Shown here piece after piece: positions 61,264-61,429 of a stretch of 64,000 nt of DNA; the first letter of the stretch is position 1; each line of letters starts with the position of its first letter. Both the position numbers and the translations under genes were made by a program. The DNA is from Octopus sinensis (taxonomy: Eukaryota), in assembly GCF_006345805.1 (NCBI RefSeq), contig NC_043025.1, forward strand, positions 12,028,001-12,092,000, read 5' to 3'. Under the pieces are notes generated by a model that saw only the letters and a program-made list of their open reading frames with translations, was not told the origin of the DNA and searched no databases.

Positions 61264-61429
61264 GGCGGTAAGCTGGCCCGGTCGTTTAGCGCGTCGGACG
61301 GAATTGCTTAGTTGTATTTCGTCCGCCGTGACGTCCTGGGGAGGTTCGCTTCCCCGGGACGTCTTTGCGGTCGGAGTACTTCTGAGTATTTTCGTTTGGT
61401 GCGCTAAACTGGCAGGCTCGCCGCCTTTT
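61264..61429 (+). ncRNA. Candidate unannotated structured RNA (closing stem plus three hairpins, ends in TTTT)
   Basis: Pairings read directly from the sequence; see findings. No family assignment. Confidence 0.5.

What the first reader, a model, noticed from the sequence alone, without database searches (positions are those of the whole stretch)
61264..61429. Unannotated ~165-nt multi-hairpin RNA candidate ending in an oligo-T terminator
Seen: a GC-rich island in AT-rich DNA folds into a four-way junction. The ends pair (GGCGGTAAGCT 61264-74 with GGCTCGCCGCC 61415-25; GTTTAGCGC 61284-92 with GCGCTAAAC 61401-09). They enclose hairpin 1 (CGGACGGAAT/ATTTCGTCCG), hairpin 2 (15 bp, GACGTCCTGGGGAGG/CTTCCCCGGGACGTC, TTCG tetraloop) and hairpin 3 (GGAGTACT/AGTATTTT). 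TTTT follows the closing stem directly. Nearly all non-Watson-Crick pairs are G-U on the + strand, whereas neutral decay of a DNA palindrome should give A-C as often. Degenerate A-box-like (TAGCGCGTCGG) and B-box-like (GTTCGCTTC) motifs are present. Inference: a Pol III-type small RNA with a Y/vault-like panhandle. From memory I cannot match it to U1-U12, U3, 7SK, SRP, RNase P/MRP, Y, vault or telomerase RNA.
Basis: partly seen in the sequence, partly recalled or inferred. Interest (0 to 1): 0.75.

Follow-up and report, generated by a model that had tools for sequence, protein, structure and literature searches.

The report
SINE-head foldback, possible hairpin RNA gene
The GC-rich "multi-hairpin RNA" is an inverted duplication of the promoter-bearing head of a common short interspersed repeat (SINE); its mutation pattern suggests, but does not prove, that one strand is made into a long hairpin RNA.

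Summary
The sequence is as described, but its best fold is one 67-bp rod hairpin (-109.9 kcal/mol), not a four-way junction (-57.9 to -74.5). No Rfam family or tRNA model matches. The main new result is that the 5' arm is homologous, from its first base, to the head of a SINE with at least 7 head-bearing copies in the window (profile E=1.7e-6). The 3' arm is the reverse complement of that head and ends at the complement of SINE nt 1. The flanks carry no SINE body. So this is a SINE-head foldback, not an independent Y/vault-like family.

It does not look like plain neutral decay. Differences between the arms are 13 G.U against 1 A.C on the + strand (7 C>T, 6 A>G, 1 G>A, 0 T>C; p=0.002), while 16 ordinary SINE copies show 54% of that type. 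It keeps 17/21 ancestral CpGs, against 18/48 in SINE copies of similar age (p=0.0014). A- and B-box-like motifs occur only on the + strand.

Caveats: there is an internal TTTT at +126. The terminal TTTT may just mirror the A-rich flank typical of SINE 5' junctions. The + strand is no more stable than neutral decay predicts. No orthologue or expression data could be obtained.

Verdict: probably a SINE-derived Pol III hairpin RNA locus (snaR/BC1-like); moderate interest, unproven.

The parts
61264..61346 (+). 5' arm: diverged copy of the SINE head, starting at SINE nt 1 (GGCGG...)
   Evidence: blastn to SINE copies in the window; alignments; nhmmer with a profile built from 7 ordinary heads: profile positions 3-75, E=1.7e-6, 23.8 bits
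61274..61284 (+). A-box-like motif TGGCCCGGTCG at +11 (9/11 to TRGCNNAGTGG); overlaps the 5-nt bulge that has no partner in the 3' arm
   Evidence: the same position in the SINE consensus scores 8/11. Weak evidence on its own, since such matches are common by chance
61330..61363 (+). Apical hairpin and pivot of the foldback: 15-bp stem with a UUCG loop
61343..61353 (+). B-box GGTTCGCTTCC at +80 (10/11 to GGTTCRANYCC), lying in the apical loop region; none on the - strand
   Evidence: the SINE consensus scores 9/11 at the homologous place
61347..61425 (+). 3' arm: reverse complement of the head, ending at the complement of SINE nt 1 (its reverse complement starts GGCGGCGAGC, 10/10 to the SINE consensus); more diverged than the 5' arm (13 vs 5 polarised changes)
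   Evidence: I1. As a SINE head in its own right it is only a weak, collinear nhmmer hit (E=3.3)
61389..61392 (+). Internal TTTT (+126..129): possible premature Pol III terminator
61426..61429 (+). TTTT directly after the closing stem: possible terminator; also what the reverse complement of the A-rich 5' flank of a SINE insertion would look like
   Evidence: 5' junctions of ordinary copies (AAAAAAAAAGGCGGCG, AATTAAGGCGG)
61232..61239 (+). TATA-like TTAAATAT at -32..-25 from the presumed start; AT-rich context, so suggestive only
   Evidence: sequence read directly

Best explanation
The element (61264-61425, plus TTTT) is an inverted duplication of the head of the window's abundant SINE: head nt 1 to about 83, followed by its reverse complement back to nt 1. 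The head is the part of a SINE that carries the internal RNA polymerase III promoter. The + strand keeps an A-box-like site at +11 and a near-canonical B-box at +80, and has T4 runs at +126 and +163. It can therefore plausibly be transcribed by Pol III into a rod-like hairpin RNA of about 126-166 nt, with paired 5' and 3' ends and a 3' oligo-U.

Since the two arms formed, they have changed almost only in ways that keep + strand RNA pairing (G.U, and U.U rather than A.A), and the CpGs have been retained. The most economical reading is that the locus is or was an active + strand transcription unit whose RNA structure is under some constraint. That would make it a SINE-derived hairpin RNA gene, comparable in kind to primate snaR or rodent BC1.

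Shown: SINE-head homology, foldback geometry, strand-asymmetric substitution, CpG retention, and presence of the motifs.
Inferred: transcription, Pol III as the polymerase, and selection.
Speculative: what the RNA does. My best guess is a ligand or decoy for double-stranded-RNA-binding proteins, or a Dicer substrate.
For: SINE origin. Self-contained unit without SINE body in the flanks. Rod fold -109.9 (+) against -68.4 (-).

Strand asymmetry: 67 pairs with 13 G.U against 1 A.C. Polarised changes on the + strand are C>T 7, A>G 6, G>A 1, T>C 0, binomial p=0.0018. Sixteen ordinary SINE copies in the same window show 71 against 60 (54%), so there is no regional bias (p=0.003 against that rate). 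The other SINE foldback at 22422-22669 is strand-symmetric, -158.6/-158.2. U.U against A.A is 5:0, and all strand-informative differences together are 18:1, p=8e-5. An asymmetry this large arose in 1-2 of 1500 neutral simulations.

CpG retention: 17/21 against 18/48 in ordinary copies of similar non-CpG divergence, Fisher p=0.0014; CpG o/e 1.40 against 0.71 for the window.

Motifs: A/B boxes on the + strand only, and closer to consensus than in the SINE consensus.

Mutational alternative: transcription-associated mutagenesis as described for tRNA genes raises both C>T and G>A, and turns only about one third of mutated Watson-Crick pairs into wobble pairs (PMC13034040; PMC6130373). It therefore does not by itself predict 13:1.
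Against: No expression data and no orthologue or paralogue could be obtained, so there is no covariation test.

The + strand energy (-110) is no better than the best strand of neutrally decayed palindromes (mean -116 to -119). The signal lies only in the direction of the changes, which an unknown strand-specific deamination process could mimic.

The internal T4 at +126 could truncate a Pol III transcript, and the nearby bona fide tRNA-iMet uses T8. The terminal TTTT is what the reverse complement of a typical A-rich SINE 5' flank gives, so it need not have been selected. The B-box has C where tRNAs have the near-invariant A58.

Seven or more disruptive mismatches and a bulge are tolerated. CpG retention may simply reflect the adjacent CpG-rich block at 61515-61600. 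All statistics come from a single locus.
Confidence: 0.45

Rival explanations
1. Neutral relic. A SINE-head foldback was produced by a rearrangement: either a snap-back or template switch at the palindromic B-box region, or two convergent SINE insertions followed by a central deletion. It has no RNA-level role, and the G.U excess is chance or an uncharacterised local strand-specific mutational bias.
For: Foldbacks of this SINE arise readily; a second one, pivoting at the same B-box region, lies at 22422-22669. The + strand stability is within neutral expectation. The terminal TTTT is explained by the A-rich 5' flank typical of SINE insertions. There is an internal T4. The neighbourhood is rich in transposable elements.
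Against: 13:1 (p=0.002) or 18:1 (p=8e-5) strand asymmetry, with both C>T and A>G contributing. No such bias exists in 16 control SINE copies or in the other foldback. CpG retention p=0.0014. The promoter-bearing arm changed less than the other (5 vs 13, not significant, p=0.10).
Confidence: 0.33
2. The hairpin acts within a longer + strand Pol II transcript (an intron or lncRNA), for example as a long dsRNA element that recruits ADAR or Dicer, rather than as an autonomous Pol III gene.
For: The asymmetry shows only that the + strand matters as RNA, not which polymerase makes it. A possible outer stem (61118-33 with 61473-88; 16/16 pairs on the + strand including 2 G.U) encloses T11 and T5 runs that Pol III would not read through. 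There are + strand SR-rich ORFs at 44.8-46 kb.
Against: The outer stem is not significant in a gapped alignment test, and a second complementary block is not collinear with it. No gene model could be established. The 4-nt loop and 80-bp stem are unlike a Drosha substrate.
Confidence: 0.1
3. An independent, older small RNA gene family from which the SINE head was derived, making this a progenitor gene rather than a derivative.
For: Its A and B boxes are closer to the canonical consensus than those of the SINE consensus. The inferred pre-duplication arm differs from the SINE consensus at 13 or more shared positions, more than any ordinary copy in the window.
Against: The SINE carries no counterpart of the 3' arm. 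The reverse complement of the 3' arm retains SINE-consensus states where the 5' arm has changed (GGCGGCGAGC), as expected from duplication of a SINE-like head. No Rfam family matches.
Confidence: 0.05
4. A retro-copy of a hairpin RNA that was hyper-edited by ADAR before insertion, or a MITE-type foldback DNA transposon.
For: ADAR editing would give A>G on the + strand at A-U pairs. The flanks TTTTCAGT and TTTTCGAT resemble each other at 6/8 positions and could be a TSD.
Against: Editing does not explain the seven C>T changes. By hand reading of the sequence context, the 5' neighbours of the six A>G sites are G, A, T, G, A, C, and two of the six carry the G that ADAR disfavours. The putative TSD is low-complexity and imperfect. 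There is no second copy of the foldback or of its flanking motif in 64 kb.
Confidence: 0.04

Closest known systems
snaR (small NF90-associated RNAs, primates)
   Same: Pol III transcripts of about 117 nt that are highly structured and derived from a SINE (a free left Alu monomer) by rearrangement and substitution (PMC2094060, PMC3045588, PMC3337139). Here likewise a SINE promoter region has been remodelled into a rod-like hairpin with a 3' oligo-U.
   Different: snaR arose by indels and substitutions, not by an inverted duplication. It is multi-copy and its expression and protein partner are demonstrated. None of that is known here, and the SINE family is unrelated.
BC1 RNA and ID elements (rodents); 4.5SH and 4.5SI RNAs
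   Same: Small Pol III RNA genes related to a SINE head, in which the tRNA-like 5' domain folds as an extended hairpin rather than a cloverleaf, and which use internal boxes plus upstream TATA-like elements (established knowledge, not tested here).
   Different: BC1 is a master gene for its SINE and has a 3' unique domain. The candidate is a pure foldback with no unique domain, and nothing shows that it seeds copies.
Adenovirus VA RNA I type architecture (the 'minihelix' class of Pol III hairpins)
   Same: About 160 nt, internal A and B boxes, 5' and 3' ends paired in a terminal stem with a 3' U overhang, and a long imperfect duplex that binds dsRNA-binding proteins, Exportin-5 and Dicer (established knowledge).
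   Different: Analogy of form only; no homology. VA RNA has a structured central domain, whereas the candidate is a simple rod.
Ordinary copies of the window's SINE, and its other foldback at 22422-22669
   Same: The 5' arm aligns from nt 1 to about nt 75 of the head (E=1.7e-6). The other foldback also pivots at the B-box region.
   Different: The candidate has no body, no tail and no convincing TSD. It scores far lower against the head profile (23.8 bits against 84-123). It has high CpG retention and a strand-asymmetric substitution pattern. The 22422 foldback is young, involves the SINE body, and is strand-symmetric.
Vault RNA and Y RNA
   Same: Pol III, a panhandle formed by the ends, internal boxes (vault).
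   Different: No Rfam hit even at E<=10. The pairing here comes from an inverted duplication of a SINE head, not from a conserved family-specific fold.

Membership tests
SINE family of this window (ordinary retroposed copy) | Head homologous to the family's Pol III promoter region, starting at nt 1 | tested here: met
   5' arm: nhmmer E=1.7e-6 against a profile of 7 ordinary heads; alignments
SINE family of this window (ordinary retroposed copy) | Family-specific body and 3' tail following the head | tested here: not met
   Flanks on both strands show no significant similarity to the SINE consensus. After the B-box the sequence is the inverted head.
SINE family of this window (ordinary retroposed copy) | Target-site duplication flanking the insert | tested here: inconclusive
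   TTTTCAGT and TTTTCGAT match at 6/8 but are low-complexity
tRNA or tRNA-derived head | Recognisable cloverleaf or tRNA covariance-model match | tested here: not met
   ARAGORN and Rfam find only tRNA-iMet at 59660-59731. No tRNA hit at E<=10 on the candidate or on a well-preserved SINE copy.
CORE-SINE / OR1 of octopus (a label I recalled from memory) | CORE central domain shared with MIR | tested here: not met
Vault RNA, Y RNA and other curated small RNAs | Match to the Rfam covariance model | tested here: not met
   No hit at gathering threshold and none at E<=10 over 61000-61700
SINE-derived Pol III small RNA gene (snaR/BC1 kind) | Derived from a SINE promoter region, with internal A/B boxes and a T-run terminator on the RNA strand | tested here: met
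   Caveats: internal T4; C at the A58 position of the B-box.
SINE-derived Pol III small RNA gene (snaR/BC1 kind) | A discrete, stable Pol III transcript | not testable with these tools
   No RNA-seq or ChIP data are accessible
SINE-derived Pol III small RNA gene (snaR/BC1 kind) | Evolutionary constraint on the RNA structure (covariation among orthologues or paralogues) | tested here: inconclusive
   Only intra-locus evidence exists: 13 G.U against 1 A.C, p=0.002. No other copy could be retrieved.
MITE / foldback DNA transposon | Multiple dispersed copies with terminal inverted repeats and TSDs | tested here: not met
   Single copy in 64 kb; the flanking motif is unique. Genome-wide copy number is not testable here.
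microRNA precursor | Hairpin of about 60-80 nt with a Drosha/Dicer-compatible stem and loop, and a family match | tested here: not met
   The only miRNA-model hits are chance matches in the (TA)n tract at 61006-61064. The candidate has an 80-bp stem and a 4-nt loop.

The most novel reading that the evidence does not exclude
A lineage-specific small RNA gene born from a SINE promoter by inverted duplication. It would be a Pol III-made RNA rod of about 160 nt, kept under selection for pairing. In an animal group that relies heavily on dsRNA-binding enzymes, it could act as a ligand or regulator of ADAR, Staufen or Dicer-type proteins, or as a precursor of small RNAs. It would be the first snaR/BC1-like exapted SINE RNA described outside mammals.
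Probability: 0.2. Interest if true: 0.65.

Novelty: new member of a known kind. Interest (0 to 1): 0.38.

Why it matters
If the RNA is real, it shows a simple route by which a mobile-element promoter becomes a new structured RNA gene: one inverted duplication around the B-box creates a self-contained Pol III hairpin unit. It would also be a concrete, testable case in a genome (apparently an octopod's) where SINEs are reported to make up about 12% of the DNA in O. vulgaris (PMC13282606) and the contribution of transposable elements to regulation is debated. If it is not real, the locus is still a useful caution. A GC-rich "novel ncRNA" with excellent folding statistics can be built entirely from a repeat, and folding z-scores say nothing about function for palindromic DNA.

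Tried and rejected
1. Rfam at gathering threshold on the whole window, and at E<=10 on 61000-61700: no family matches the candidate. tRNA detection was also negative.
2. Four-way junction: rejected on energy, since it is 35-52 kcal/mol worse than the rod.
3. SINE body remnants in the flanks: not significant. An exact 11-mer, GGGTCGATAAA, shared with the SINE body is in the wrong order to belong to the 3' arm's copy.
4. A larger degraded palindrome around the element: there is one 16-nt outer stem, but it is not significant in a gapped test and a second block is not collinear with it.
5. A downstream "exon" (ATGGGTGTCCG...gtaagt): rejected, because it is part of a ~585-bp direct duplication.
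6. Transcription of the - strand: there are no A/B boxes or T-runs on that strand and the fold is much weaker.
7. Comparative data, all without result: exact-protein look-ups with five ORFs on or near the element; homology searches with the spanning ORF and with an SR-rich exon; DNA pattern scans of the metagenome and prokaryote genome collections, whose hits were chance 21-mers in Polyangium-like bacteria.
8. Homologues of the neighbouring retroelement ORF led to three loci. Two lack the SINE altogether, and the third is a 1-kb retroelement copy.
9. Naming the SINE: the literature search by sequence strings found nothing. One paper hit was an artefact, because "sine" also matches "sinensis".
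10. ADAR-edited retro-copy: the neighbour preferences do not fit, and C>T changes are unexplained (plus hand reading of the sequence context).
11. Regional transcription-coupled bias: control SINE copies show 54% pair-preserving-type transitions.
12. Pfam on seven ORFs on and around the element: no domains.

Full report
WHAT IS IN THE SEQUENCE

It is a GC-rich island, GC 0.60 against 0.40 for the window. Folded as RNA, the + strand gives one long imperfect hairpin at -109.9 kcal/mol. Its z-score is -12.3 and no shuffle out of 200 folds as well. The - strand reaches only -68.4 kcal/mol, z -5.9.

The rod has 67 pairs: 54 Watson-Crick and 13 G.U. It also has one A.C, one G.A, one C.U and five U.U oppositions, plus a 5-nt bulge at 61279-83.

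It scores -57.9 kcal/mol as written and -74.5 when the rest is optimised. Its hairpin 1 is what 5' prefixes of 65-105 nt fold into, so it could form transiently during transcription. `repeat finder` independently reports the core arms 61284-61342 and 61351-61409.

KNOWN FAMILIES

No Rfam family matches, either at gathering thresholds over the whole window or at E<=10 over 61000-61700. The only tRNA in the window is an initiator-type tRNA-Met at 59660-59731 on the - strand. ORFs that happen to span the element have no Pfam domain and no homologues.

WHAT IT IS MADE OF

A self-search of the window showed that the 5' arm resembles sequences at 29799, 27786, 36386 and 19363. These are copies of one SINE-like repeat. 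It has at least seven head-bearing copies, several tandem partial copies, and fragments in both orientations.

The candidate aligns with the head of this SINE from its first base (GGCGG...) through the B-box region. A profile built only from the seven ordinary heads finds 61266-61340 at E=1.7e-6 in a search of the whole window, covering profile positions 3-75.

After the B-box the candidate does not continue into the SINE body. It runs back as the reverse complement of the head and ends at the complement of SINE nt 1. The reverse complement of the 3' end is GGCGGCGAGC, identical to the SINE consensus at all ten positions, including two positions where the 5' arm has changed. As a SINE head in its own right the 3' arm is only a weak, collinear hit (E=3.3), in keeping with its greater divergence.

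Neither flank contains significant SINE body sequence on either strand. The object is therefore a self-contained 162-nt foldback of a SINE head, with its pivot at the B-box.

The two arms share 13 states that differ from the SINE consensus. They therefore descend from one already diverged head sequence, either a single copy or an unsampled subfamily. The candidate scores far below ordinary copies against the head profile: 23.8 bits against 84-123.

HOW THE FOLDBACK AROSE

This cannot be settled here. Two models fit:
- A snap-back or template switch at the B-box region of one copy or its transcript.
- Two convergent insertions of the same subfamily, followed by deletion of everything between their B-box regions.

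In favour of the second, the reverse complement of the 3' arm with its flank reads AAAA|GGCGGCGAGC. That is the A-rich 5' junction seen at ordinary copies such as AAAAAAAAAGGCGGCG and AATTAAGGCGG. This also means the terminal TTTT may be inherited rather than selected.

Foldbacks of this SINE form readily. At 22422-22669 there is a near-perfect palindrome of SINE body sequence that pivots at the same region.

IS IT MORE THAN A DECAYING PALINDROME?

Three tests say yes, with caveats.

(a) Direction of change. I polarised every difference between the arms against the SINE consensus. On the + strand there are 7 C>T and 6 A>G, each leaving a G.U pair, against 1 G>A and 0 T>C, which would leave A.C. 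Under strand-symmetric decay these classes are equally likely, so the binomial p is 0.0018.
- Sixteen ordinary SINE copies in the same window show C>T 58, G>A 38, A>G 13 and T>C 22 on the window's + strand. That is 54% of the pair-preserving type, so there is no regional bias. The candidate differs from that rate at p=0.003.
- The other foldback folds equally well on both strands, -158.6 against -158.2.
- Same-base mismatches are U.U five times and A.A never. All strand-informative differences together are 18:1, p=8e-5.
- The + strand composition is G55 C42 T46 A19, whereas a palindrome starts with A=T and G=C.
- In simulations of neutral decay of the reconstructed palindrome, an asymmetry of 41.5 kcal/mol or more arose in 1-2 of 1500 runs.

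(b) CpG retention. The arms keep 17 of 21 ancestral CpGs at about 11% non-CpG divergence. Ordinary copies at 10-13.5% divergence keep 18 of 48 (Fisher p=0.0014). CpG o/e is 1.40, against 0.71 for the window.

(c) Promoter motifs. An A-box-like site at +11 (9/11) and a B-box at +80 (10/11) occur only on the + strand. Both are slightly closer to consensus than those of the SINE consensus. The promoter-bearing arm also changed less than the other, 5 against 13 polarised changes, but this is not significant (p=0.10).

CAVEATS

- The + strand energy is not better than that of the better strand of simulated neutral palindromes (mean -116 to -119). Only the direction of change is unusual, not the amount.
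- A strand-specific deamination of A and C on the + strand would give the same picture. As described for tRNA genes, however, transcription-associated mutagenesis raises both C>T and G>A, and only about one third of mutated Watson-Crick pairs become wobble pairs (PMC13034040; PMC6130373). That process does not predict 13:1. In any case it would also imply that the + strand is the RNA-like strand of an active unit.
- An ADAR-edited retro-copy does not explain the C>T changes. By hand reading of the sequence context, the 5' neighbours of the A>G sites are G, A, T, G, A, C, which is not the ADAR preference.
- CpG retention could be a by-product of the adjacent CpG-rich block at 61515-61600.
- The internal T4 could end Pol III transcripts at about 129 nt. 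The neighbouring tRNA-iMet uses a T8 terminator.
- The B-box has C at the position of the near-invariant A58.

MECHANISM I COMMIT TO (CONFIDENCE ABOUT 0.45)

Pol III initiates near 61264 from the inherited internal promoter, possibly helped by a TATA-like TTAAATAT at -32..-25. It terminates at the T4 at +163-166, or partly at +126-129. The RNA first forms the 5' local hairpin and then zips into a rod of about 67 bp. Its 5' end is paired and it has a 3' U overhang, the form recognised by La and, for RNAs of the VA type, by Exportin-5 and dsRNA-binding proteins.

Whether it acts as a protein ligand or decoy, or as a source of small RNAs, is speculation. Small RNAs from the 3' arm would no longer match the SINE consensus over more than 10 nt, so silencing of the SINE is not a likely present-day role.

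The main rival is a neutral relic (0.33). Lesser rivals are a structural element inside a longer Pol II transcript (0.10), a progenitor gene of the SINE head (0.05), and an edited retro-copy or a MITE (0.04).

COMPARISON WITH WHAT IS KNOWN

In kind, this is closest to SINE-derived Pol III small RNA genes. These include primate snaR, which is Alu-derived, about 117 nt, highly structured and NF90-bound (PMC2094060, PMC3045588, PMC3337139), and rodent BC1 and 4.5S RNAs. In form it resembles VA-RNA-type minihelix hairpins.

It is not a member of the vault, Y, tRNA or miRNA families. It is not an ordinary copy of its SINE, since it has no body or tail. It is not a demonstrated MITE, being single-copy in the window.

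I could not name the SINE. A well-preserved copy gives no tRNA hit at E<=10.

WHAT COULD NOT BE DONE

No orthologous or paralogous copy of the element could be retrieved.
- Exact-protein look-ups with five ORFs found nothing.
- Two homology searches found nothing.
- Four DNA pattern scans found either nothing or chance bacterial 21-mers.
- Homologues of the neighbouring retroelement ORF led to loci that lack the SINE, or that cover only the retroelement.

The covariation and expression tests therefore remain the decisive experiments.

VERDICT

The element is a foldback of a SINE head, and that removes most of the "unknown RNA family" novelty. Its strand-asymmetric, pair-preserving substitution pattern and its CpG retention make it a credible, though unproven, SINE-derived hairpin RNA locus. 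Interest 0.38; new member of a known kind.

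Noticed in passing
window 22422-22669: Near-perfect palindrome made of SINE body sequence (reverse complement of about nt 68-185 joined to nt 95-238). It folds at -158.6 (+) and -158.2 (-) kcal/mol and pivots at the same B-box region as the candidate. 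A young foldback, which suggests this region of the SINE is prone to inversion or template switching.
   Followed up: partly
window 30027-30638 and 36582-36951: Head-to-tail arrays of 5'-truncated SINE units (about 155-190 bp each, 3-4 units), each array adjoining a full-length copy. These are SINE-derived tandem repeats.
   Followed up: no
window 59249-59731 (- strand): An initiator-type tRNA-Met (A1:U72, GGG/CCC anticodon stem, A54/A60 by eye) with (TA)n upstream and a T8 terminator 7 nt after its 3' end. It is followed immediately by a retroelement-like ORF (RPHLEYCCPLWSP...) that has 39 unnamed homologues and a 78.5%-identical DNA copy in a JGI metagenome contig (L015). This may be a tRNA-adjacent retroelement insertion, or a tRNA-plus-LINE-tail arrangement of the kind from which SINEs arise.
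   Followed up: partly
window 61515-61600: CpG-rich block (o/e 1.43) just downstream of the candidate, containing the octamer ATGCAAAT (61559-66), three GTGCGCG motifs and a CACGTG. It shows no RNA structure signal on either strand (z +0.4 and +0.9) and has no other copy in the window. It could be a promoter or enhancer; its relation to the candidate is unknown.
   Followed up: partly
window 61118-61133 and 61473-61488 (also 61445-61455): Outer inverted repeat flanking the candidate: AAACTGGGTTGAAGAA and TTCTTTGACCCAGTTT, 14/16 Watson-Crick. Both exceptions are G.U on the + strand. It exceeds 200 of 200 shuffles in an ungapped test but is not significant in a gapped alignment test. The right-hand motif is locally duplicated. 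If real, it implies a longer + strand RNA context.
   Followed up: partly
window 61634-62215 and 62218-~62800: Direct duplication of about 585 bp. It contains what at first looked like a start codon plus splice donor (ATGGGTGTCCGTCGCTCTTATATgtaagt), so that is not an exon.
   Followed up: partly
for example window 27987-28050; at least 17 copies across the window on both strands: A separate short high-copy repeat of about 64 nt (GGTATAAGTCCTGGAGTCGATTTGTTTGACTAAAGGCAGTGCTCCAGCATCGCCACAGTCAAATGAC), 83-91% identical between copies and sometimes adjoining the SINE tail.
   Followed up: no
window 44787-45197 and 45382-45957 (+ strand): Long serine/arginine/lysine-rich ORFs that look like exons of an SR-type protein gene. 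There was no Pfam hit, and no homologue was found for the first of them (the low-complexity filter is probably responsible).
   Followed up: partly
window 5700-9000, 47700-48900, 52870-53240: Extensive (TATG)n, (CA)n and (TA)n-type microsatellite tracts that generate long spurious ORFs in several frames.
   Followed up: no
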